Shown piece after piece: positions 6,385-58,470 of a stretch of 64,000 nt of DNA; within the stretch, counting starts at the first letter, position 1, and every line of letters begins with the position of its first letter. Under the pieces are notes generated by a model, which had not been told where the DNA came from, ran no database searches, and was given only the letters and a program-made list of their open reading frames with translations. The translations under genes and the position numbers were made by a program. Where the stretch lies: positions 62,001-126,000 of the IMG/VR virus record IMGVR_UViG_3300048591_000147; one strand, 5' to 3'.

Positions 6385-6606
6385 AATGTTTGAGTTCCTT
6401 TGCTGGCTGTTTGTAGTACTCACGTTCATGTTTCTTGCAACTTCTGATGCAGAGCAGCATGCGCAAATCAGTTCAGCACGTATCGAAGTAGCACAGAAAC
6501 TATGTGCTGAACGTGGAGTGGAGTGGATCTCTCTACGAAAGGTTAAGTGCAAAGACAATTCCGTGTATACTAACTACTATGTCGAAACGAACTAGGATAT
6601 AATCAA

Positions 6607-7122
6607 ATGAGTATTGAAGCGCGTATTGCTGCTGTCAAACAGGCATTGGAAGACTATAAGAAATCCTTTGTGCCTCCTGCCATCACTTGGGATGAATTCT
6701 GGGAACCGTACAAGGCGATCATTCCCCAGATTGCAAGTGGAGAGAACTTCACTTATGAGAATGAATGTGATGTGGAATTCACTCCATTCTATGATGACGA
6801 TATCGAAAAGTGGCGGCTATTCGCATATTCATTTGATCTTGAACGTAATGATGACGATGGCTTGTGTATCTTAATCTATTACTTCGATGGTGATTGTAGC
6901 TGGGAACCATTCGAACAGATCACTGTCGAGGATGATTTTAGTGATGCGTATAATCGATTCTTCAACACTGACGATTACTTTATCGGTTGGACTGAATACC
7001 ATCTCTGGTGTGCTGAGAATGGTGGCGTTGATCCGTTGAAAGAATTCTTTCACAGTGCAACTACTGTCGAGAATCATCTTAGCGCCGCTGAAGATACTAT
7101 CAGAGTCCTTTCTAAGCCCTAA
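6607..7122 (+). CDS. acidic hypothetical protein
   Basis: 171-aa D/E-rich ORF with AGGA RBS. Confidence 0.75.
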   Translation: MSIEARIAAVKQALEDYKKSFVPPAITWDEFWEPYKAIIPQIASGENFTYENECDVEFTPFYDDDIEKWRLFAYSFDLERNDDDGLCILIYYFDGDCSWEPFEQITVEDDFSDAYNRFFNTDDYFIGWTEYHLWCAENGGVDPLKEFFHSATTVENHLSAAEDTIRVLSKP

Positions 7123-14265: not shown

Positions 14266-14343
14266 GGCTCCGTAGCTTAGCGATCTAAAGCGGGTAATTC
14301 TAAACTACTGTCATCCTCGGTTTGAATCCGAGCGGAGCCACCA
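14266..14343 (+). tRNA. tRNA with CUA anticodon (amber-suppressor-like)
   Basis: GGCTCCG/CGGAGCC acceptor, ACCA end, loop TT-CTA-AA, T arm CTCGG-TTTGAAT-CCGAG. Confidence 0.75.
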
Positions 14344-25000: not shown

Positions 25001-25076
25001 GCCCTCTTAGCTCAGAGAAATAGAGCACTCCCGTTCTAGGGAGGGGTCGGTGGTTTAAGTCCATCAGAGGGCGCCA
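25001..25076 (+). tRNA. atypical tRNA with a 6-nt anticodon loop (GTTCTA)
   Basis: Perfect GCCCTCT/AGAGGGC acceptor, D and T arms, CCA; CTCCC/GGGAG encloses only 6 nt. Confidence 0.6.
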
Positions 25077-34042: not shown

Positions 34043-34953
34043 CCATCATTAGCCGACCATTCATTATTAATATAATTTAGATTATGTCCAAATTTTGATA
34101 TTATTCGCAGAAGACTTCTCTTATTTAATCCGATAGTTCTACTAGCTAATGATATAGATGCGTATACAACATTGTTTATAGTAATGGATTTATTTGTACT
34201 ATGTTGTATCAATGGTAATTGTACTTTTGGATTGTCATTATTATACCACATTCTATTGGATAGCAATAAGTGTCTACCAAATTTATTGATCGCATTAGTA
34301 ATTGCATGTGTGCCCATATCTATGGCCTTTGACGCATTCAATATTGATGGATACATCACATCATTGATGGATATTGGTTTAGACTTCGGATGAGTTTCAC
34401 TGGAATAAGTAGTTTTGTTAGCTACTACATATTCTGATTTATTCTTTTGCTTACGGCCGCCTCGTGGTCGTCTCATTTTGTCTATTGTTTCTTTGGAAAA
34501 TATTCTACCTTTCATCGCATTTGATAATTTCTCTCTCGTTTCTTTAGATTTTATCTTACCTTTCATCTTCTCCCTTGTTTGTAAAGAATGTTTCTTACCT
34601 AGTCTGGCTAAACGCCTTTTTTCTTTAGTTGCTTCAGATGTTGGCTGTTTCTTTTCTGTTGGACCGCCTTGACCACCGGGTGCGACATTATATCCTATGG
34701 CCGGATTTCTAGCATCTAATTGCACTATCAATGTCTGTTCCATATCTAAAATTGTTTGTTTGTCATCTGATTCAAAAAGAATTTCTGATTGAAAATTCTC
34801 AAATCCGTATAAATGTAATGCATGTTGAAAATGAGATTTACCTTTATTTCTCTTACAATGTTTCTCAAAACGTTCTTCTATATTTTTAGATGTATAGCCG
34901 ATGTAAAACTTACCATCTATACGATTAGTTACTTTGTATACTATGTATTTCAT
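34024..34953 (-). CDS. free-standing GIY-YIG homing endonuclease with NUMOD3-like repeats
   Basis: IVYKVTN..DGKFYIG, GYN and HSLQTREKM / KSKETREKLS repeats; TATAAATA at 34975-34982 (minus strand). Confidence 0.88.
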   Translation of the reverse strand: MKYIVYKVTNRIDGKFYIGYTSKNIEERFEKHCKRNKGKSHFQHALHLYGFENFQSEILFESDDKQTILDMEQTLIVQLDARNPAIGYNVAPGGQGGPTEKKQPTSEATKEKRRLARLGKKHSLQTREKMKGKIKSKETREKLSNAMKGRIFSKETIDKMRRPRGGRKQKNKSEYVVANKTTYSSETHPKSKPISINDVMYPSILNASKAIDMGTHAITNAINKFGRHLLLSNRMWYNNDNPKVQLPLIQHSTNKSITINNVVYASISLASRTIGLNKRSLLRIISKFGHNLNYINNEWSANDGQPTRS

Positions 34954-38662: not shown

Positions 38663-38770
38663 GGGAGCGTGGCCAAGTGGTAAGGCAGCAGACTTTTTAA
38701 GTATTTTTACAGTCATTAAGAATACTTAGAAATCTGTTTATCGTGGGTTCGAATCCCACCGCTCCCACCA
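38663..38770 (+). tRNA. tRNA (probably Lys-UUU) with a 33-nt insertion in the anticodon loop
   Basis: Perfect acceptor, D and T arms and CCA; 40 nt between the GCAGA and TCTGT anticodon stem strands. Confidence 0.75.
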
Positions 38771-44460: not shown

Positions 44461-44782
44461 ACAAATTCAGGAACCATTCAGGTTAGTAATGATAGAATGG
44501 TTTCAACAAATGAGGAAGAGATACCGTAACTTAGATTGTCACCCTCCGGTTGGGTTAACGATGGTTCGATTCCATCTGACAATGTAAGCGCCCACGGGTA
44601 TATGTCTAACGAGGCTCGGACATACCATTTCAGTGCGATGTGACCGTTACACAAAGGTAAGAGAGTTTGGTGAGATTACACCATTCAGGTATGTCTAGTC
44701 ATGCCCCATCGCCCAATTACACTAGGTAAGCCATGGCCATGGTGAAGCCTACACGTAGAGTCATGATCTATGTGGTGTTGCG

Positions 44783-44855
44783 TCCAGATTCTTCTAGTGG
44801 TTAGGAAAGGCCCCCGATTGCGGGCTTAACACAGGTTCGAATCCTGTATCTGGAC
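44783..44855 (+). tRNA. tRNA-like element with 8-nt anticodon loop and no encoded CCA
   Basis: TCCAGAT/ATCTGGA acceptor, AGTGGTT D loop, ACAGG-TTCGAAT-CCTGT T arm. Confidence 0.55.
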
Positions 44856-45215
44856 TAAGTTCTTCAATCAAATCAAGAGGTTATCGTGAAAATTTTTCTG
44901 CAAATATTCTCTGCCGTACTACTGATAATTGCGATAACCGCAGTGAACAAAGCGTTACAGTCGCCTATGAATGGTATGCCTTTTGTAGCTGGTGCATGTG
45001 TCACAGCATTCATCGAAGTATTCCGCGCCTATTGCAGGAAGGATTAACATGAACGTCATCCGCTCAAACCTTGAAACATATTTTTACATGGCTCTGCAAA
45101 CTTCGCGGGAAGTTGATCAACGGATTGGCGAAAACTTCAAGTCCATTCAGACAGCAGCAATCGAAGATACACTGAAAGCCGTCCAAGATGGCGAACAACT
45201 GTGGATTGTAGAATA

Positions 45216-45794: not shown

Positions 45795-46637
45795 TATGAG
45801 TCATGATAAGAAAGTCAAGGAACATCTAATTGCGCGAATGAAACAGTGTGAACTGTACGCGCTCCATTGGATGCATAGTGCTAGCAATGGTACATGCTTG
45901 AATCGTACCATGTATCGCTATAACGATGCTGGTGAAGAAGTCCTATTGACTCCCGATGAACTTCGTCAGGATGCCATGCGTACATCACAACGTCACATTG
46001 AGAATTTTAACCAAGCCATGGATGATCTCATGGGTTTGCCTGATGAAGCATTCAGCTAGCGTTCAGGTGACTATGGTATAGTTACTATACACAAACGGGG
46101 GTCACCATGAAAAACTACAAGATCACACTTGAAGATAAATTTCTGGTGACGGATGAAAAGTCAACCTCCAATTTCATTTGGGCTCTGACTGGTGGTGGCA
46201 TGTCAAAGGCAGCAACCATCAGAGCACTGAACGCATCGCGCGTACTGGACAATGATGGTCGATTGGAACTGAAGACCAAGGATGGCAAGATCGTCCTGTT
46301 CGAAACCATTCCGAAGTAAATCAAATGGATATGCACGATACAATTTTTGAGCTTGGAGAAAAATGTAAGTCATTACATGGACAACTTCGTGAATTGGGCG
46401 TGTCATCATTTGATACACCCGAAAAATTCCATGTGTATTGTATCCTGAATGCTGCATGGATTTGGACTGCATCCTATCACAGGCTATGCGAATATGGTAT
46501 AACTGATGAGATTGAAGAATCACTTGATGACGCTGAAAGATATCTGAATAAGATTAGAAGGACATAACTTAACGATTCTTCAAGTCAAAAGTCAATGGGG
46601 GCCTAGCTTCCGTTGACTGTTTCTTTACGATACTTCC

Positions 46638-47939: not shown

Positions 47940-48534
47940 TTCAGAATCCATTCATCTAGTGTGTAGTATCATAGCTACACACTAGAGCAAACGGAGAACG
48001 AAATGTCCGATGAACAGGTTCTGGCAGTGCTGGCACGAATGGCTGAAGACGCTGGCGATTATGCGGAAGCTGATCGCCTTCGCGAACCCTCCTACGATCA
48101 ATCAAAGGAAGTGTGATGAACCTTCCCACCAACATCCAGAATTTGATTGCCACTGCCCTCCCGGTTGACCCCGGAAACTACAACAATTCGATTGAAGCAT
48201 ATGACGGTGGTTATCGCGATGCGATGGAATCAATCGCCATGGCGTTGACTGGCACCATTCCAGAAGGATTGTTGTTGGATGCGGTGAATGCTGCACTGGA
48301 CGCATTCGCCAACAATTGTGCTGATGGTGATTTCGAGGATGATGGCCAGCCATCTGAACAGCAAGAATGGCGCGATTACGATCCTGACTGTTAAGCTGGC
48401 ATTCAGGTAGGTAGCGTATAATACAATACATCAACCAAGAGGGGAACGTCATGCAGGAAACAGAAGATCTGTGGGAAGCTGAATGGAACGCTTGGATGGA
48501 ATCGCAGGAAGATGAAGAGTTGGACTGCTGTCTG

Positions 48535-48615
48535 TAAGATGAACAAAGCCTGAATGACCTTCAGGCTTTTTCTTTACTTGTAATCAATTACATGCTAAAA
48601 TGGGTGCGTGGTCGG
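48535..48615 (+). repeat. long dispersed element copy upstream of the tail-fibre-like cassette
   Basis: Near-identical to 42603-42684. Confidence 0.9.
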
Positions 48616-48661
48616 GGAAAACTCCTTTAAGATAAATAGATAGAAAAGGAGTTTTACAAAA

Positions 48662-49213
48662 ATGGCAAATACAAAGATTAGTGCGTTACCTGCTGCGACC
48701 AACCTGACAAGTGCTGAGTTACCTATAGCACAAGGTGGTGTCACTAAGAAGATTTCAGCCGCAGACCTTAACACACATATTCAAACTACGCTTGTTTCTA
48801 CTACTATAAGTCTAGGTGTGGTAGAATTAGCAACAACGGCTGAAGTTAGCGCTGGAACAGACACTGCTCGCGTATTGACTCCAGACACATACAGAAATGC
48901 TATTCCCTATTACATTAGCAGAAGCACATCCTACAATCTAGCGCTTACTGACAGAAACACTGACCAATGGTGTACTGCTGCTCTTACTGCCAACATCCCC
49001 GCAGAGAGTGGTGTAGCATTTGACATTGGCACTTCAATACCATTTCTTCGCATAGGTTCTGGTACTGTTACTATTGACGCCAACGGTGCAGTAACTTTGA
49101 ATGGTGTGCTTGGTGGTTCCTGTACCATACGCACACAATATCAAGGTGCCCTGTTAAAGAAAATCGGCAACGATAATTGGGTGATCAGTGGTGACGTGAG
49201 TGCTGTTGTATGA
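48662..49213 (+). CDS. tail-fibre-like structural protein
   Basis: TKISALPAAT start, GVVELATTAEV..GTDT.R.LTP repeat, Y....L.K...D.W...GD end; GATAAATA at 48631. Confidence 0.7.
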   Translation: MANTKISALPAATNLTSAELPIAQGGVTKKISAADLNTHIQTTLVSTTISLGVVELATTAEVSAGTDTARVLTPDTYRNAIPYYISRSTSYNLALTDRNTDQWCTAALTANIPAESGVAFDIGTSIPFLRIGSGTVTIDANGAVTLNGVLGGSCTIRTQYQGALLKKIGNDNWVISGDVSAVV

Positions 49214-50609: not shown

Positions 50610-50846
50610 ATGAAAAAGATCATGTTGGCCCTGTGTGTGGGCCTGTTGCTTGGCGGATGTGATGCAACCACAACTGAAGTTCATGGCTTTATCCTACCAG
50701 AAGGTCTGAAAGACTGTAAGATCTACCGACTGCGAGATGGCATTAGCCACATCACTGTCACCCGATGCCCGAATTCCTCCACATCCACACAGTATCAGAC
50801 GGGTAAGACTACCAGTAGCTCAACGCTTGTGGAAGATTCTCCGTGA
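50610..50846 (+). CDS. small lipoprotein
   Basis: LGG-C lipobox; TTCAG-type promoter and TAACAACTGGAG leader. Confidence 0.7.
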   Translation: MKKIMLALCVGLLLGGCDATTTEVHGFILPEGLKDCKIYRLRDGISHITVTRCPNSSTSTQYQTGKTTSSSTLVEDSP

Positions 50847-52260
50847 GCAAATTCAAGGAAATGCCTGTTGCAACGTGGACCACAGTTGTGGCATCATACG
50901 TCTACTGTCTGTTGACAGCTATCTAAACCTCTATCAACCAAGGAACTCCAATGGGCTATTACATCGAAACAAACAGTAACAAGAACAAGGCGCAGTACAT
51001 CGCTGCCAATCATGGTGGCAAGATTGTCAGCCGTCAAGAGCTTCTGGCTGCTGACGTGAACGCCAATGGTCTGGTCGTTGTTGTCAACAATGGCTTTTTC
51101 GAGGCTGCTGCATTCTGCTTCAGTGATCGCGAACGTCAGGAATTCACTGATCTGAACGATCATCGCCCGAAGCAGTATGTGATCATGGACCGCAAGCTCG
51201 CTGAACAGTTGACCGGATACCGCTAAACAATCCATTCAGCTACGGTTCAGGCTTCGCACTATATAATATTATCCATAGTCAAGGAGAATATTAGATATGC
51301 GAAGCCTGATTGCTGTTCTGATCTTCACCCTGTGCGCCAGCGCGAATGCTGCCACAGTAACAATCGTTGATTTTTCAAAGACTTACGAGCATCAATTTTC
51401 GAATTGCTCAATCAATCTGTATAACACAGAATTTCTATATGCTTCTTGTGAACGATACGCTGCGCCATTCGCCAGTGCATCAGCATCAGATTGGTCGTCA
51501 CCACTGTTCGATGAGATTGGTATCAATGGTGTTTACTGGCATGGCTGCAAGCTGACTGGCGATCCTTCGCTGTCAATTCGCTTTGAATGTAATGTTCCAG
51601 TATCGCCCATGGAATTTGAAGTTGTCGATGAATATAACAATCCTGTTCAGGATTGGTTCAGGTTCTATCGTCCATACTATGGTCCATACACTCACTGATC
51701 GGGAAGACGCCATGAATAACCTGAATGAGTACATCCGCACCAAGAACTTCCGCCTCAAGATGTTTGGTCAGGCTTGCTTGGAACTTCCGAAGGATGCCAA
51801 GAAGATCATGGAGATGCTGGATTCGGATATGTCGCCTGAGAATGTTTCGTGTGATGGTGAACTCAGTCGCGCCGAAGTGGCTCGCAAGATGAAGTTTTTC
51901 AAGAGTGTGGAACAGGAACTCGGGGCATACCAATGATGAGAGTCATAACAGCAGTTGGATTTTGCAGATACAAAGGCTGGCTCGTATCTTTCTCTGATAA
52001 TGCGCCAGTGACTGGACGGTGGAGCGCTACCAAGTATGGTATCAGCATATGTAACACAACCGAGGATGGTTTGAAGCAAATGATTGATATCAATGTCCAT
52101 GACAAATGGCATGCAACCGCTCACCTTCCACGATAGTCTGAACGGGAACGGCTAGGTCTGTAAACCTAACACAATGGGAGAAGTGACTCCCCATCAGAGT
52201 GATGGTCTATCTGGTAAGGATAGACAGGCCGGGTATAAACCGGGTTCCTTATTACCTCTT

Positions 52261-54408: not shown

Positions 54409-54965
54409 TATGATAGTTTCACACTGAATGAGGGGCACGAAATGGCGATGAAGCTCTGGCGGTTGGATATGACTGATCATGAACATAACGATCATTACCA
54501 AGATGGCTGTCACAATTACGCCGATGGACATTATGTCATCGCTGAAACTGAAGCCCAAGCGCGTGCGATGATTGATGATCCCCGAACACCCGGAGTATGG
54601 GGAAATCCCGAATATTCTGCATGTGAAGAAATTGACATGACCGAACCACGGTATCTCACTTGCGAATATGATGTTCACTAATTGGAGAAAATACAATGCT
54701 TATCACCCGAGTTTCCCCGTGGAACGGTAAAGTAAATGAGCGCGATCTCCCTGTTACGGATGCACAGATGGAACGCTTCGCGAGGCGTGAAGATCACATT
54801 CAGAACATTTTTCCCGATCTGAGTGCTGGTGACCGCGAGTTCATCATGACCGGATACACTGAACAGGACTGGGACGAGTTGTTCCCAGAGGATGATGATG
54901 AAGCATAACTGAACGAACCCTGAATGATCTTCAGTGTTCTTCTTTACATCTATAACATAATATAG

Positions 54966-54986
54966 TAAAATGGGTGCGTGGTCGGA
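54966..54986 (+). repeat. dispersed element copy
   Basis: TTTACA-N17-TAAAAT-GGGTGCGTGGTCGGA. Confidence 0.88.
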
Positions 54987-55073
54987 GGGAGTCGAACCCT
55001 CTAGGTGATCAAGCCTTGTCTCCGTAAGCTGCACATTCAAGTGCTGTGCGAATCAACACACGCCATCTAGCCC
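54985..55073 (-). pseudogene. degenerate class-II tRNA lacking its 3' acceptor strand
   Basis: GGGCTAG start, D-like, anticodon-like (CTTGAAT) and variable arms, GAGGG-TTCGACT-CCCTC T arm, then the repeat element. Confidence 0.5.
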
Positions 55074-55605: not shown

Positions 55606-55628
55606 GATATATCCTATTGATCTAAAAA

Positions 55629-55785
55629 GGAAGGGGCTGGCAGGATTCGAACCTACTAGTATCTCTCGCCTTGTAAGGTGAGCGCAAAACTGTCCATCAG
55701 TCGGAAAGATCCCTCATTATGCTATGAGTTATCATATCGAGTAGAACGTGATCAGCGCCCTACTGTTTCCTCCGACATCAGCCCC
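55629..55785 (-). ncRNA. 153-nt tRNA-mimic RNA (acceptor stem + T arm + large internal domain)
   Basis: GGGGCTG/CAGCCCC stem, GTAGG-TTCGAAT-CCTGC T arm; own tandem-TTCAG promoter at about 55831-55805. Confidence 0.65.
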
Positions 55786-56265
55786 GTTGTTGAGATGAAC
55801 TATACCATAGTTACCTGAACACAAGCTGAACAAGACATTCAGGAATCATTCATATTAGTGTGGTATAATGCGCCGAAATCATCAAGTACGCTACAAAGAC
55901 CCGGAGAATACAAATGTCCAATAATTTTGTCTATCGTGTGATGCGCAATGCTGACAGCACCGAAGGTCGTGGCCCCATGATCTATGTCGTCACATTCGAA
56001 ACCTTTGCTGCTGCAAATGCCTACGTCATGCACAAAGGTTCGCCATATGGTCACAAACTCACCGCTTCTCGCAACACAGACGGTGATAAATGGTCGTATG
56101 ATGGGTGGTATGATGTTCACAAGGATGAAGTGTTGCAAGAGTATGACATCGAACAAGTGAAAAAGAACCTAGCAGAATTGAGGCAGATTGAAGAGCGTGC
56201 AGCAGTCTTGCGCGCACTGACCAAGCTGTAATATACTACCAATCCAACATTAGAGAATTACACAA

Positions 56266-57003
56266 ATGAGTGAAATGATCGCCTTTCCATCCATCGAATC
56301 TTTGCGCCATGTTGTCAAAGGCACGGAAATTCGTTGCAAAATCAATAACTTGCAGTTGCCCAAGGTCGAGTACATTGGCACTGTCAAGCTCCATGGCAGC
56401 AATGCGTCTGTGCGATTCACTGCGGATGGCCAGATCATCCCACAATCTCGCAACCGTGTGCTGAGCGTTGGCGATGACAATTTCGGCTTTGCCGCATTCG
56501 TTGAAAAGAACAAACCACTTTTCAAGCATTTCCAAGACATCATTCCCGAAAATGAATTCACAGTTTACGGTGAGTGGTGTGGTGGTAGTGTTCAACCCAA
56601 GGTAGCATTGGAGCAATTGGAAAAGCATTTTGTCATCTTTTCCATCTTGATTGATGGTGTCATGTGCCCAGTGGTGCTGGGTGGTGATGTGTTTGTCTGG
56701 AATGAAGCTGGAATCTGGTGTGTCAGTCAAATTCCAACGTATAAGATCACAGTCGATTTCAGTCGTCCAGAAGATGTGGTTGATGAACTGACCGGTCTTA
56801 CCATCGCTGTAGAAAAGGAATGTCCATGGGGTAAATTCCGTGTGCAGAAGGATTTCAACAATACTTGCACCATTAACAATGGTAATATCACATGGGATAA
56901 TGATATTGCGGATTGCAAACTAAAGGATGAAATAGAATCAAAGATTATCCGATATGTCCAAGCAAATAACTTGCTTAGTAAGAGAATTACCATTTCTGTT
57001 TGA
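56266..57003 (+). CDS. rnlB: RNA ligase 2 family, N-terminal fragment
   Basis: FPSI..LR, motif I KLHGSN, QSRNR, DN.GFA and GEWCG; conserved part ends after ECPWGKF. Confidence 0.8.
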   Translation: MSEMIAFPSIESLRHVVKGTEIRCKINNLQLPKVEYIGTVKLHGSNASVRFTADGQIIPQSRNRVLSVGDDNFGFAAFVEKNKPLFKHFQDIIPENEFTVYGEWCGGSVQPKVALEQLEKHFVIFSILIDGVMCPVVLGGDVFVWNEAGIWCVSQIPTYKITVDFSRPEDVVDELTGLTIAVEKECPWGKFRVQKDFNNTCTINNGNITWDNDIADCKLKDEIESKIIRYVQANNLLSKRITISV

Positions 57004-58006
57004 TAAAGGTATATTCATTATACTGAATTTCATCAGGATGGCGCAACAATCGTTTAATTGTCTTATCATTGGCTCCAAGTTTGGTAAGAAACTTCCCAAT
57101 GCTGATAATGGTAAACTCGCTATTATCAGCATTGTTTTTTACTATGTACTTGTTTGATGATAATGGAGCATATTCACCGCTGACGAATCTATCATCTAAT
57201 ACTGACATGCGACATACTTGATTGTTTATATTTCTAACAGTCATCATTTTCTGGCGCATATTACTCAATTTCTGTTTTGTTTCTTCTGAATGTTTCATGC
57301 CTTTATTATGATGCTTGAATATTTCACTAGAATACTCAGAAGTTTTGATTCTACATTTGTTACCACGCACATCAAATACAGTAACATATCCTTTGGAATG
57401 TCCTACAAGATTAGGATTACTTGCAAATTCAGAATTATTAACCAATATCTTGTTGCCGCTTGTGATATCTAACGCCACAACCTTGTTAGTATTACACGGT
57501 ATCATATATGAACTATCAAAGTCTTCACTCGTTATCTGCCGTATGATACCGTTATTGGTATCGAACACTTTGAATTTACCTTTGGTAATACCAACATACC
57601 CATCCGTAGACTCACCAGTTTTAACTATCTCCGGTTTCATGGTAGTTGTGTTCAACATCAATCGATTATTCTTGTTCCTACTATGCTGAAGACTGCATGA
57701 AAATCCTCTAGAAGTTTGTTTTGCTTTATTATAGAATGATGGGTTAGTATCTACATTGAATCTTTTATGTAAACGAATCTCCAAGTTCAATGCTTTAGTT
57801 TTTTCTGTAGTTGTGTATAGTACAATATATTTGTAGTGTGATCTATTGGTTAATTGATCTTTTACAAATTCTTTGTCCTTGGATGATGAAAAATATTTAA
57901 CTCCCAAGTCATTGACAGGTAACACATTTGATGGTATGCTTCTGTATCCATAGTAATGTTTACCAAGTAATTTATTGGTAATGCGATACACATAATAAAT
58001 TCTCAT
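56987..58006 (-). CDS. GIY-YIG homing endonuclease inserted antisense in the RNA ligase 2 gene
   Basis: YYVYRITN...HYYGYRS, YFSSS, FYN.A and HSEETKQKLS; TATAAATA at 58068-58075 (minus strand). Confidence 0.85.
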   Translation of the reverse strand: MRIYYVYRITNKLLGKHYYGYRSIPSNVLPVNDLGVKYFSSSKDKEFVKDQLTNRSHYKYIVLYTTTEKTKALNLEIRLHKRFNVDTNPSFYNKAKQTSRGFSCSLQHSRNKNNRLMLNTTTMKPEIVKTGESTDGYVGITKGKFKVFDTNNGIIRQITSEDFDSSYMIPCNTNKVVALDITSGNKILVNNSEFASNPNLVGHSKGYVTVFDVRGNKCRIKTSEYSSEIFKHHNKGMKHSEETKQKLSNMRQKMMTVRNINNQVCRMSVLDDRFVSGEYAPLSSNKYIVKNNADNSEFTIISIGKFLTKLGANDKTIKRLLRHPDEIQYNEYTFIKQKW

Positions 58007-58020
58007 CTAGGACTCTCCAT

Positions 58021-58470
58021 ATGCAAATTTGTATAACGAAAATTGATGAAACTCCCGTCAACATACCTATTTATAGCTTTTCCAATTTTATCGGTGAAGG
58101 CATTGTGTGGGCACCAGTGGATAACAGCCTACCATTTGAAATGTGGTTCAAGACCAAGGGCTTGGAGCATAAGAAGGGAGCGAAGGCACCAAAGGTTGAA
58201 GTGGCCCCAGAAGTCATGCAGACGCAACGTGAGCTAGCAGAAAAGCTGTTGCCTGACTGGCGGTTGGAACAAGGTATCAGTGTCCTGCGCGAGCGTGGGT
58301 TGGATATTGAGCCCAAGAATATTGGTGTATATCTACAGTGGATCAGTGAAGACATTCTGAAAGAGGAACAGGATGTGATGGCTGCAAATGGTGTGGAGTG
58401 GAAAAAGATCAATCCTATCGTACTCCAACGTGCTCGCCAGCACATTCTGGAACTCTGTAAGAAGTTCTGA
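58021..58470 (+). CDS. rnlB: RNA ligase 2 family, C-terminal fragment
   Basis: Motifs IV and V: IGEGIVW, WFKTKG; AGGA RBS upstream. Confidence 0.75.
   Translation: MQICITKIDETPVNIPIYSFSNFIGEGIVWAPVDNSLPFEMWFKTKGLEHKKGAKAPKVEVAPEVMQTQRELAEKLLPDWRLEQGISVLRERGLDIEPKNIGVYLQWISEDILKEEQDVMAANGVEWKKINPIVLQRARQHILELCKKF

What the first reader, a model, noticed from the sequence alone, without database searches (positions are those of the whole stretch)
55629..55785. 153-nt tRNA-mimic RNA with tmRNA-like ends but no tag or Ala identity
Seen: the 5' end GGGGCUGAU pairs with 3' CAGCCCC after a canonical T arm, followed by UUCC and a U run. The interior has GUCGGAGG/UUUCCGAC closing two hairpins (GUAGGGCG/CGUUCUAC and CUCAU/AUGAG), then CUCACCU/AGGCGAG. 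It is the first unit after a perfect minus-strand TTCAG promoter. Established: tmRNA begins GGGGCUG but has G3:U70, a tag ORF and about 360 nt; bacterial Y RNAs (YrlA) mimic the tRNA elbow. Here the pair is G3:C70 and no CCA is encoded. Inference: a novel tRNA-mimic, for example a decoy for SmpB, synthetases or anticodon-nuclease sensors.
Basis: partly seen in the sequence, partly recalled or inferred. Interest (0 to 1): 0.75.

Follow-up and report, generated by a model that had tools for sequence, protein, structure and literature searches.

The report
Conserved tRNA-shaped RNA in jumbo phages
A 153-nt RNA gene with its own phage promoter folds into the top half of a tRNA with an extra three-armed insert in place of a working anticodon; it is conserved with compensating base changes in three related 300-kb phages, matches no described RNA family, and its function is still unknown.

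Summary
On the minus strand (55785 to 55633) a 7-bp acceptor stem, a canonical T arm (loop UUCGAAU) and the interior helices are all present. The RNA sits 13 nt after a phage promoter with tandem TTCAG boxes.

I found two homologues. One is in a 173-kb metagenome contig (L087) and one is in a complete 306-kb IMG/VR phage (L307). All helices survive, with four compensatory pairs, and the RNA changes about five times more slowly than neighbouring third-codon positions.

Promoter plus RNA is the conserved unit. The adjacent RNA ligase gene and the downstream small ORFs are missing in L307.

ARAGORN and Rfam (tRNA, tmRNA, YrlA and all other families) give no match. It is not a tmRNA:
- the pair is G3:C70 in all three genomes;
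- there is no tag reading frame;
- there are no pseudoknots.

It is not a decoding tRNA either. The "anticodon-like" hairpin changes length and loop between genomes.

Its layout is that of a tmRNA tRNA-like domain plus a 77-nt three-way-junction arm, whose two loops (CUGAUCA, AGCAUA) are invariant.

Best reading: a stable, non-decoding tRNA mimic that acts in trans and is matured by tRNA-processing enzymes. Its partner is unknown. No transcript data could be obtained.

The parts
55799..55830 (-). Promoter: two TTCAG boxes (55830-55826 and 55819-55815) and an extended -10, TGGTATAGT (55807-55799).
   Evidence: Same architecture as about 40 other promoters of this genome, for example window 46051-46082(+), which drives a 70-aa ORF. 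Nearly identical in L087 and L307. No transcription data.
55786..55798 (-). Spacer of 13 nt (UCAUCUCAACAAC) between the -10 and G1. The part transcribed would be a short 5' leader, presumed to be removed by RNase P.
   Evidence: Identical in all three genomes. The processing step is an inference from the acceptor/T-arm minihelix.
55779..55785 (-). Acceptor stem, 5' strand GGGGCUG (RNA 1-7), followed by A8 U9 (55778-55777).
   Evidence: 7 bp with 55633-55639. Invariant except G1:C to G1.U in L307.
55700..55776 (-). Branched arm (RNA 10-86). P2 is 10-17/79-86. P3 is 22-30/38-46 with loop CUGAUCA (55755-55749). P4 is 53-55/76-78 plus 58-62/69-73 with loop AGCAUA (55723-55718).
   Evidence: Compensatory pairs at 13:83, 26:42 and 55:76. 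Both loops and the P4 hairpin are invariant in three genomes.
55692..55699 (-). Unpaired segment UGAUGGAC (RNA 87-94) carrying the conserved GG, a likely D-loop analogue that would contact the T loop.
   Evidence: UGGAC is invariant. A 4-bp D stem, ACUG/CAGU, is possible here but is broken in L307, so the segment is treated as unpaired.
55658..55691 (-). Long irregular arm (RNA 95-128): 95-97/126-128, C102:G123, and hairpin 104-110/115-121 with loop UACA.
   Evidence: Pair 97:126 covaries (U:A, U:G, A:U). In L307 the hairpin is shortened to CUCAC-AGAA-GUGAG, so the loop is not an anticodon. Wastewater variants carry 55660 T>C, which is A126G, as in L087.
55640..55657 (-). A129, then the T arm GUAGG-UUCGAAU-CCUGC (RNA 130-146).
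   Evidence: Canonical T loop. Pair 131:145 is U.G or U:A.
55624..55639 (-). Acceptor 3' strand CAGCCCC (55639-55633), discriminator U (55632), and trailer UCCUUUUU. No CCA is encoded.
   Evidence: The trailer is not conserved in L087 or L307. ARAGORN's calls show a few other tRNA genes of this phage ending without an encoded CCA.

Best explanation
It is an independent phage gene for a stable, non-decoding tRNA mimic. It is transcribed from its own TTCAG-type promoter.

The acceptor stem stacked on a canonical T arm, together with a conserved GG segment that can dock on the T loop, gives the tRNA 'top half'. That is what RNase P, 3'-end trimming enzymes and CCA-adding enzymes recognise. The transcript is therefore expected to be cut at G1, trimmed to U154 (the discriminator, tRNA position 73), given CCA, and to accumulate like a tRNA.

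It cannot read codons, because the arm in the anticodon position is an irregular stem whose loop is not conserved.

The specific activity most likely lies in the 77-nt three-way-junction arm inserted after nucleotide 9. Its two loops (CUGAUCA and AGCAUA) are invariant and probably bind a protein or another RNA. The tRNA-like core would serve as the processing, stability and recruitment scaffold.

The genome carries a heavy load of tRNA and RNA-repair genes, so the partner is most plausibly part of the tRNA-centred conflict between phage and host.

Shown here: structure, conservation, autonomy of the module, and non-membership of known families. Inferred: transcription, processing, stability and any binding.
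For: - Structure and significance. Four compensatory pairs (13:83, 26:42, 55:76, 97:126) and 99% pairing, against 40-50% for slid controls.
- Purifying selection: 7 of 153 differences between window and L087, against 16 of 67 at third-codon positions of the adjacent ORF (p = 5e-5).
- Autonomy: in L307 the promoter and RNA are kept, but the ligase cassette, the 105-aa gene and the 66- and 49-aa ORFs are absent, and convergent genes follow.
- Not decoding: the hairpin loop UACA in the window is AGAA in L307, with a shorter stem. There is no tRNA call from ARAGORN or Rfam.
- Maturation enzymes: the phage encodes a PF01743 nucleotidyltransferase, the family that includes CCA-adding enzymes.
- Genomic setting: 34 tRNA genes, Ro60/TROVE, and four matches to the RNA-ligase family PF09414, three above the family cut-off, plus a T4 Rnl1-type ligase.
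- Possible second family member with a different inserted arm: L087:6473-6631. It has the same core order, AAUGGAC segment and T stem, but scores only 17.9 bits.
Against: - No RNA evidence at all. The four wastewater runs behave as DNA and are kept as contigs.
- Only three homologues, all from one phage lineage, so the covariation statistics are thin (44 of 500 shuffles reach the observed score).
- No partner has been identified.
- The proposed D-loop/T-loop contact and RNase P cleavage are inferred by analogy.
- A + strand promoter at 54932-54971 points antisense toward the locus, and its effect is unknown.
Confidence: 0.5

Rival explanations
1. It is the Y-RNA equivalent of the phage's Ro60 (TROVE) protein. 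The tRNA-like module and the branched arm would tether Ro60 to an RNA-processing enzyme, as YrlA and Yrn1 do.
For: - Both complete genomes that carry the RNA encode a Ro60 homologue (phrog_850).
- No YrlA-type RNA is detectable near the Ro60 gene or anywhere else in the genome.
Against: - The RNA lies 29 kb from the Ro60 gene, whereas known Y RNAs lie within about 4 kb.
- The GNCGAA motif is absent. The nearest candidate, GUCGGAGG, changes to GUCAGAGG with a compensating change, so it is selected as a helix and not as a sequence.
- The topology differs. Here the RNA ends sit at the acceptor stem, not at a Ro-binding stem.
- The co-occurrence is between close relatives and proves nothing.
- The complex prediction was not run by the tool.
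Confidence: 0.12
2. It is a decoy or sponge for a host factor that binds tRNA or tmRNA. That factor could be an anticodon nuclease or other tRNA-targeting defence protein, or SmpB, which recognises the tmRNA tRNA-like domain.
For: - The core has the element order of a tmRNA tRNA-like domain and the same first nine nucleotides (own knowledge of E. coli tmRNA).
- P3 is a 9-bp stem with an invariant 7-nt loop, CUGAUCA, that resembles an anticodon loop.
- Phage tRNAs are known to counter anticodon nucleases (PMC10264068, listed; the paper was not read in full).
- The phage carries other aberrant tRNA-like genes.
Against: - Nothing was tested.
- The host and its defences are unknown.
- A G3:C70 RNA cannot be alanylated, but whether SmpB would bind it is not known.
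- No Rfam tmRNA model scores above noise.
Confidence: 0.12
3. It is a real tRNA gene interrupted by a 75-nt insert, which is cut out and the ends rejoined by one of the phage's RNA ligases.
For: - When RNA 10-83 is removed in silico, ARAGORN calls a tRNA-Val(CAC).
- An RNA ligase gene lies next to the RNA in the window, in wastewater variants and in L087.
- Other tRNA genes of this phage carry inserts in the anticodon loop.
Against: - The putative anticodon arm of that call is weak and is deleted in L307.
- The insert is better conserved than the supposed exon.
- No splicing endonuclease of the EndA type is encoded.
- The ligase is absent next to the RNA in L307.
- No ribozyme or intron model matches.
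Confidence: 0.06
4. It is a cis-acting 5' leader that controls processing, stability or translation of the three small ORFs downstream (66, 57 and 49 aa).
For: - In the window and in L087 the RNA is followed, without a convincing terminator, by ORFs on the same strand.
Against: - In L307 there is no ORF downstream on the same strand.
- The probable paralogue in L087 sits in a different operon and is absent from the window.
Confidence: 0.05
5. It is a decaying tRNA or tmRNA remnant with no function.
For: - It is lineage-restricted and single-copy, it is not called by any gene finder, and it has a non-canonical core.
Against: - It evolves about five times more slowly than neighbouring synonymous sites.
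- It has four compensatory pairs.
- It has a conserved dedicated promoter.
Confidence: 0.05

Closest known systems
tRNA-like domain of tmRNA (Rfam RF00023; SsrA)
   Same: - It starts GGGGCUGAU.
- The element order matches: acceptor 5' strand, unpaired GG-containing D-loop analogue, long stem in place of the anticodon arm, T arm, acceptor 3' strand.
- It is non-decoding.
   Different: - G3:C70 instead of G3:U70, and U73 instead of A73.
- No tag reading frame and no pseudoknots.
- 153 nt instead of about 360 nt.
- An extra 77-nt three-way-junction arm after nucleotide 9.
- The stem is closed by a loop.
- No covariance-model match.
Bacterial and phage Y RNAs of the YrlA type (Rfam RF02553; Chen et al. 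2014, PMC4201824)
   Same: - It is a non-coding tRNA mimic with a canonical T arm and D-loop-type GG.
- It is found in a genome that encodes Ro60.
- It has a second module attached to the tRNA-like part.
   Different: - In YrlA the ends form the Ro-binding stem and the acceptor-like stem is closed. Here the ends are at the acceptor stem.
- No GNCGAA motif.
- It is 29 kb from the Ro60 gene.
- No model match.
Phage T4 RNA C (species 1 RNA, rnaC; NC_000866 70908-71046)
   Same: - It is a phage-encoded small RNA of about 140 nt with a canonical T arm, a terminal stem, a long arm and a further hairpin.
- Its biological role is still unknown after decades (PMC3014915, PMC9697503).
   Different: - No sequence similarity beyond the T arm. 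Model R1 scores it at 14 bits, like ordinary tRNAs.
- T4 RNA C lies at the end of the tRNA cluster. This RNA has its own promoter, far from the tRNA clusters.
Ordinary tRNA (Rfam RF00005)
   Same: - 7-bp acceptor stem, 5-bp T stem and a UUCGAAU loop.
- There is no linker between the T stem and the acceptor.
   Different: - No 7-nt anticodon loop is conserved.
- There is no D stem in L307.
- There is a 77-nt extra arm.
- No match from ARAGORN or Rfam.

Membership tests
tmRNA | G3:U70 wobble pair (alanine identity) | tested here: not met
   G3:C70 in the window, L087 and L307.
tmRNA | Internal tag-peptide reading frame with a resume codon, flanked by pseudoknots; length about 300-400 nt | tested here: not met
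   The RNA is 153 nt. ARAGORN in tmRNA mode finds none in the genome. The only AUG opens an 8-codon frame inside P2/P3.
tmRNA | Match to the Rfam tmRNA covariance models | tested here: not met
   No match at E<=10 over 601 nt. The only hit is a 5.6-bit fragment on the T arm over 166 nt.
tmRNA | Binding by SmpB | not testable with these tools
   The phage encodes no SmpB.
tRNA | Cloverleaf with a 5-bp anticodon stem and a 7-nt loop | tested here: not met
   The arm is 7 bp plus a tetraloop in the window and L087, and 5 bp plus AGAA in L307. ARAGORN and RF00005 give nothing.
tRNA | Acceptor stem plus T arm with a T-loop consensus | tested here: met
YrlA / Y RNA | Encoded within about 4 kb of the Ro60 gene on the same strand | tested here: not met
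   Same strand, but 29 kb apart: RNA at genome 117.6 kb, TROVE gene at 146.1-147.7 kb.
YrlA / Y RNA | GNCGAA(N)G motif near the 5' end | tested here: not met
   GUCGGAGG, GUCAGAGG and GUCAGAGC in the three genomes, and the change is compensated in the helix.
YrlA / Y RNA | 5' and 3' ends form the Ro-binding stem, and the acceptor-like stem is closed | tested here: not met
   The ends form the acceptor stem. RF02553 gives no match at the locus.
YrlA / Y RNA | Bound by Ro60 | not testable with these tools
   One search was not folded.
T4 RNA C-type stable RNA | Sequence or structure homology to rnaC | tested here: not met
   R1 scores rnaC at 14.4 bits, the same as T4 tRNAs. Only the general design is alike.
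Small self-cleaving ribozymes (hammerhead and others) | Conserved catalytic core at a three-way junction | tested here: not met
   No Rfam ribozyme match at E<=10. CUGAUCA lies in a hairpin loop, not in a junction.

The most novel reading that the evidence does not exclude
These phages carry a family of 'cargo-bearing' mimics of the tmRNA tRNA-like domain. A conserved core (acceptor, AU or AC, GGAC segment, closed stem, one A, T arm) is processed like a tRNA and displays an exchangeable inserted arm. The window's RNA and L087's second RNA would be two members with different arms. The core would engage a tRNA- or tmRNA-binding factor, such as SmpB, the phage Ro60 or a defence nuclease. The invariant loops, one of them the palindrome UGAUCA, would recruit or dimerise a second partner. 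This would be a new class of phage RNA effector.
Probability: 0.15. Interest if true: 0.8.

Novelty: new variant of a known kind. Interest (0 to 1): 0.58.

Why it matters
Phage-encoded tRNA look-alikes have been known since T4 RNA C, yet none has an assigned function apart from the Y RNAs.

This RNA is compact, well defined and under clear structural selection. It has a dedicated promoter and two invariant loops that can be mutated. It sits in phages that also carry Ro60, a nucleotidyltransferase of the CCA-adding family, several RNA ligases and more than 34 tRNAs. That makes it a tractable entry point to the question of what non-decoding tRNA mimics do during infection: defence evasion, RNA repair or control of ribosome rescue.

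It also shows that tRNA finders and Rfam miss such genes.

Tried and rejected
**Searches that found no further homologue**
- blastn of the locus against 50,697 phage records found no match.
- Neighbour proteins (66 aa, 105 aa, ligase) gave only distant loci in IMG/VR, none with the RNA. The 66-aa protein has no close relative in the 5.8-billion-protein set and no annotated fold relative.
- Most hits of the end-anchored pattern in metagenomes were archaeal intron-containing tRNAs or a chance 5' match to GGGGCUG upstream of an ordinary tRNA.
- Both bacterial-genome scans gave nothing related.
- The distant jumbo relatives Stenotrophomonas phages RAS14 and CM1 and Xanthomonas phage Xoo-sp13 hold only ordinary tRNAs.

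**Readings rejected**
- D-arm reading: CUGAUGGACAG is a true D arm in ordinary phage tRNAs, and a model with a 4-bp D stem is nearly isoenergetic. The stem breaks in L307, so I dropped it.
- Val-tRNA reading: rejected after L307.
- Functional link to the adjacent RNA ligase: rejected, because the ligase is absent beside the RNA in L307.
- Cis-leader reading: rejected for the same reason.
- Homology between the inserted arm and the inserts of other odd tRNA genes: blastn gives only chance-level words.
- Stop-codon recoding of the phage: no sign of it.

**Tests that gave no usable result**
- Transcript evidence: the runs are DNA-like contigs.
- Ro60-RNA complex prediction: not folded by the tool.

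Full report
**What is there**

The window is bases 62001-126000 of a 314,956-bp IMG/VR virus record with direct terminal repeats. It is a jumbo phage, 39% G+C and standard genetic code. It is distantly related to Stenotrophomonas and Xanthomonas jumbo phages. It encodes:
- rIIA and rIIB, and a T4 Rnl1-type ligase;
- four matches to the RNA-ligase family PF09414, three of them above the family cut-off;
- a Ro60/TROVE protein;
- a PF01743 nucleotidyltransferase, the family that includes CCA-adding enzymes;
- 34 tRNA genes called by ARAGORN, and no tmRNA.

It is single-copy in the genome. JGI's gene calls leave the stretch between the 66-aa and 105-aa genes empty.

**Anatomy**

Positions are RNA positions; window coordinate = 55786 minus position.
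- Acceptor stem: 1-7/147-153.
- A8 U9.
- Arm P2: 10-17/79-86. It opens into a three-way junction.
- P3: 22-30/38-46, loop CUGAUCA.
- P4: 53-55/76-78 and 58-62/69-73, loop AGCAUA.
- Unpaired UGAUGGAC: 87-94.
- An irregular arm made of 95-97/126-128, C102:G123 and hairpin 104-110/115-121.
- A129.
- T arm: 130-134/142-146, with loop UUCGAAU.
- Discriminator U154 (tRNA position 73), then UCCUUUUU. No CCA is encoded.

The single-sequence fold gives -54.1 kcal/mol with z = -3.0.

**Promoter**

The upstream element is a tandem pair of TTCAG boxes 11 nt apart (start to start), followed by TGGTATAGT. It belongs to a promoter class of about 40 clean copies concentrated in this part of the genome. One copy, almost identical in layout, drives a 70-aa ORF at window 46107. 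G1 lies 13 nt after the -10, so a short leader would be transcribed.

**Homologues**

Sequence searches in annotated phages and through neighbouring proteins failed. Pattern scans anchored on the ends found two homologues.
- L087:1501-1653, on a 173-kb metagenome contig. It scores 198 bits with model R1.
- L307:1199-1347, on a complete 306,759-bp IMG/VR phage. It scores 134 bits.

Wastewater assemblies hold further near-identical variants. No other member turned up in IMG/VR by three further motif scans, in bacterial genomes, or in the distant jumbo relatives.

**Selection on structure**

- Between window and L087 the RNA differs at 7 of 153 positions. The adjacent ORF differs at 16 of 67 third-codon positions (p = 5e-5).
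- In the three-way alignment (A4), 99.2% of pair cells are standard pairs, against 40-50% when partners are slid by 1-3 columns. Three pairs change on both sides.
- RNAalifold, run without my structure, returns the same helices. It adds 95-97/126-128, where 97:126 is U:A, U:G and A:U in the three genomes. That is a fourth compensatory pair.
- With three related sequences the shuffle control is weak (44 of 500), so the case rests on the combination of evidence.

Invariant single-stranded parts are the P3 loop, the P4 loop, UGGACAG, UUUGCG and the T loop.

**What it is not**

*tRNA.* ARAGORN and RF00005 do not call it. The arm in the anticodon position changes from 7 bp with loop UACA to 5 bp with loop AGAA. 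ARAGORN calls tRNA-Val(CAC) when positions 10-83 are removed in silico, but that call uses a weak stem that is deleted in L307.

*tmRNA.* The pair is G3:C70 everywhere, there is no tag frame, the RNA is 153 nt, and no model matches.

*YrlA / Y RNA.* There is no RF02553 match and no GNCGAA motif. The ends sit at the acceptor stem rather than at a Ro-binding stem. The RNA is 29 kb from the Ro60 gene, whereas known examples lie within about 4 kb (PMC4201824).

*Ribozyme or other Rfam family.* Nothing scores above noise.

**What it resembles**

If the P2-P4 arm is set aside, the order is: acceptor, AU, unpaired GG segment, long closed stem, one nucleotide, T arm, acceptor. That is the order of the tmRNA tRNA-like domain, whose first nine nucleotides in E. 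coli are also GGGGCUGAU (own knowledge).

T4 RNA C has a comparable overall design of terminal stem, long arm, hairpin and canonical T arm. Its role is still unknown. It shares no similarity with this RNA beyond the T arm.

**Context and autonomy**

In the window the RNA is followed by three small ORFs (66, 57 and 49 aa). It is preceded divergently by a 105-aa gene and an RNA ligase of the phrog_548 family. In some wastewater variants the 105-aa gene is missing. In L087 the start of the ligase gene abuts the RNA's promoter region.

In L307 the picture is different. The ligase cassette, the 105-aa gene and the 66- and 49-aa ORFs are all absent, and the RNA is followed by convergent genes. The promoter and the RNA are nevertheless kept. 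The conserved unit is therefore promoter plus RNA. This argues against a cis-leader role and against a specific tie to the ligase.

L087 also has a second element of about 155 nt (6473-6631). It has the same core order, an AAUGGAC segment, a single A before an almost identical T stem, and acceptor GGGGUUG, but a different inserted arm. It is weakly supported (17.9 bits; fold z = -1.05) and has no counterpart in the window.

**Mechanism proposed**

Inference, except where marked. Transcription starts from the TTCAG promoter. RNase P cuts at G1, because a 12-bp acceptor/T-arm stack with a T loop is a sufficient substrate (established knowledge). The 3' end is trimmed, and CCA is added by the phage's PF01743 enzyme or the host's (the gene is shown). 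An elbow forms between G91 G92 and the T loop. The result is a stable tRNA-shaped RNA that cannot decode. Its conserved three-way-junction loops would bind a partner.

I could not test Ro60 binding or SmpB binding. The phage lacks SmpB and an EndA-type splicing endonuclease.

**Verdict**

The feature is real and conserved, and it is a previously undescribed lineage-specific tRNA mimic. The specific decoy functions remain untested. No expression data are available.

Noticed in passing
window 38663-38767 (+): A tRNA gene scoring 61 bits with RF00005 but missed by ARAGORN. It has a 36-nt insert in the anticodon loop that extends the anticodon stem into a long hairpin. Its D arm resembles that of tRNA-Gln.
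   Followed up: partly
G000:C1:35367-35479 (+), 34337-34423 (+) and 48476-48806 (+) (outside the window): Further insert-bearing tRNA-like genes. One is a copy of the phage tRNA-Lys with anticodon CUU and a 26-nt hairpin after position 37. Two are His(GUG)-like tRNAs with inserts of about 50-55 nt after position 37, and those inserts contain T-arm-like hairpins. No EndA-type endonuclease is encoded.
   Followed up: partly
window 3963, 9721, 13375, 37129, 42670, 48602, 54972, 60389 (+); 63299, 61244, 52274, 49970, 46651, 41057 (-): A conserved box of about 23 nt, TAAAAT-GGGTGCGTGGTCGGAGG, in about 16-17 copies across the genome. It sits right after either TTCAG-type or TTGAC-type upstream boxes. 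Many minus-strand copies point into the ends of convergent genes. GGUCGGA resembles the Ro-binding GGUCCGA of Y RNAs and shares GUCGGAGGAA with the RNA studied here. Its meaning is unknown.
   Followed up: no
window 3741-63352 (about 40 sites): A phage-specific promoter class of two TTCAG boxes 11-12 nt apart plus a -10. It is usually followed by a leader that ends in CAACAAC, a GGAG ribosome-binding site and ATG.
   Followed up: partly
window 56266-58470: The phrog_548 RNA ligase gene is split. The N-terminal part is 56266-57003 and the C-terminal part is 58021-58470. A homing-endonuclease gene lies between them on the opposite strand (56987-58006). A wastewater variant lacks the 1,247-bp insert. 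In L087 the same gene is interrupted after about 44 codons by different DNA.
   Followed up: partly
G000:C1:146067-148393 (-) and L309: The Ro60/TROVE gene has a tRNA-Gly(GCC) gene upstream on the same strand in both complete phages. In this phage an aberrant tRNA-Ser(CGA) gene sits there as well. No YrlA-type RNA was found nearby.
   Followed up: partly
L087:6473-6631 (-): A second tRNA-like element of about 155 nt in the relative. It has the same core layout but a different inserted arm. It is absent from the corresponding intergenic region of the window (about 50810-51052).
   Followed up: partly
L002:13304-13907 (+), and L131: An unrelated 192-kb phage carries four tandem tRNA genes. Each has a conserved insert of about 65 nt in the variable region, with motifs CACCGTTCGG and GAACAAACAAGC. 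ARAGORN calls none of them; Rfam calls two.
   Followed up: partly
window 14266-14343, 25001-25076, 44782-44856 (+): An amber-suppressor-type tRNA (anticodon CUA) although the phage shows no sign of TAG recoding; a tRNA with a two-base 'anticodon' call; and a tRNA called Asn with the unusual anticodon AUU.
   Followed up: no
window 54932-55050 (+): A strong sigma-70-like promoter (TTTACA, spacer, TAAAAT) points antisense toward the three small ORFs and the RNA. The transcribed start contains the reverse complement of a T arm (GAGGG-TTCGACT-CCCTC on the minus strand). Wastewater variants have an 18-nt insertion at 54983.
   Followed up: no
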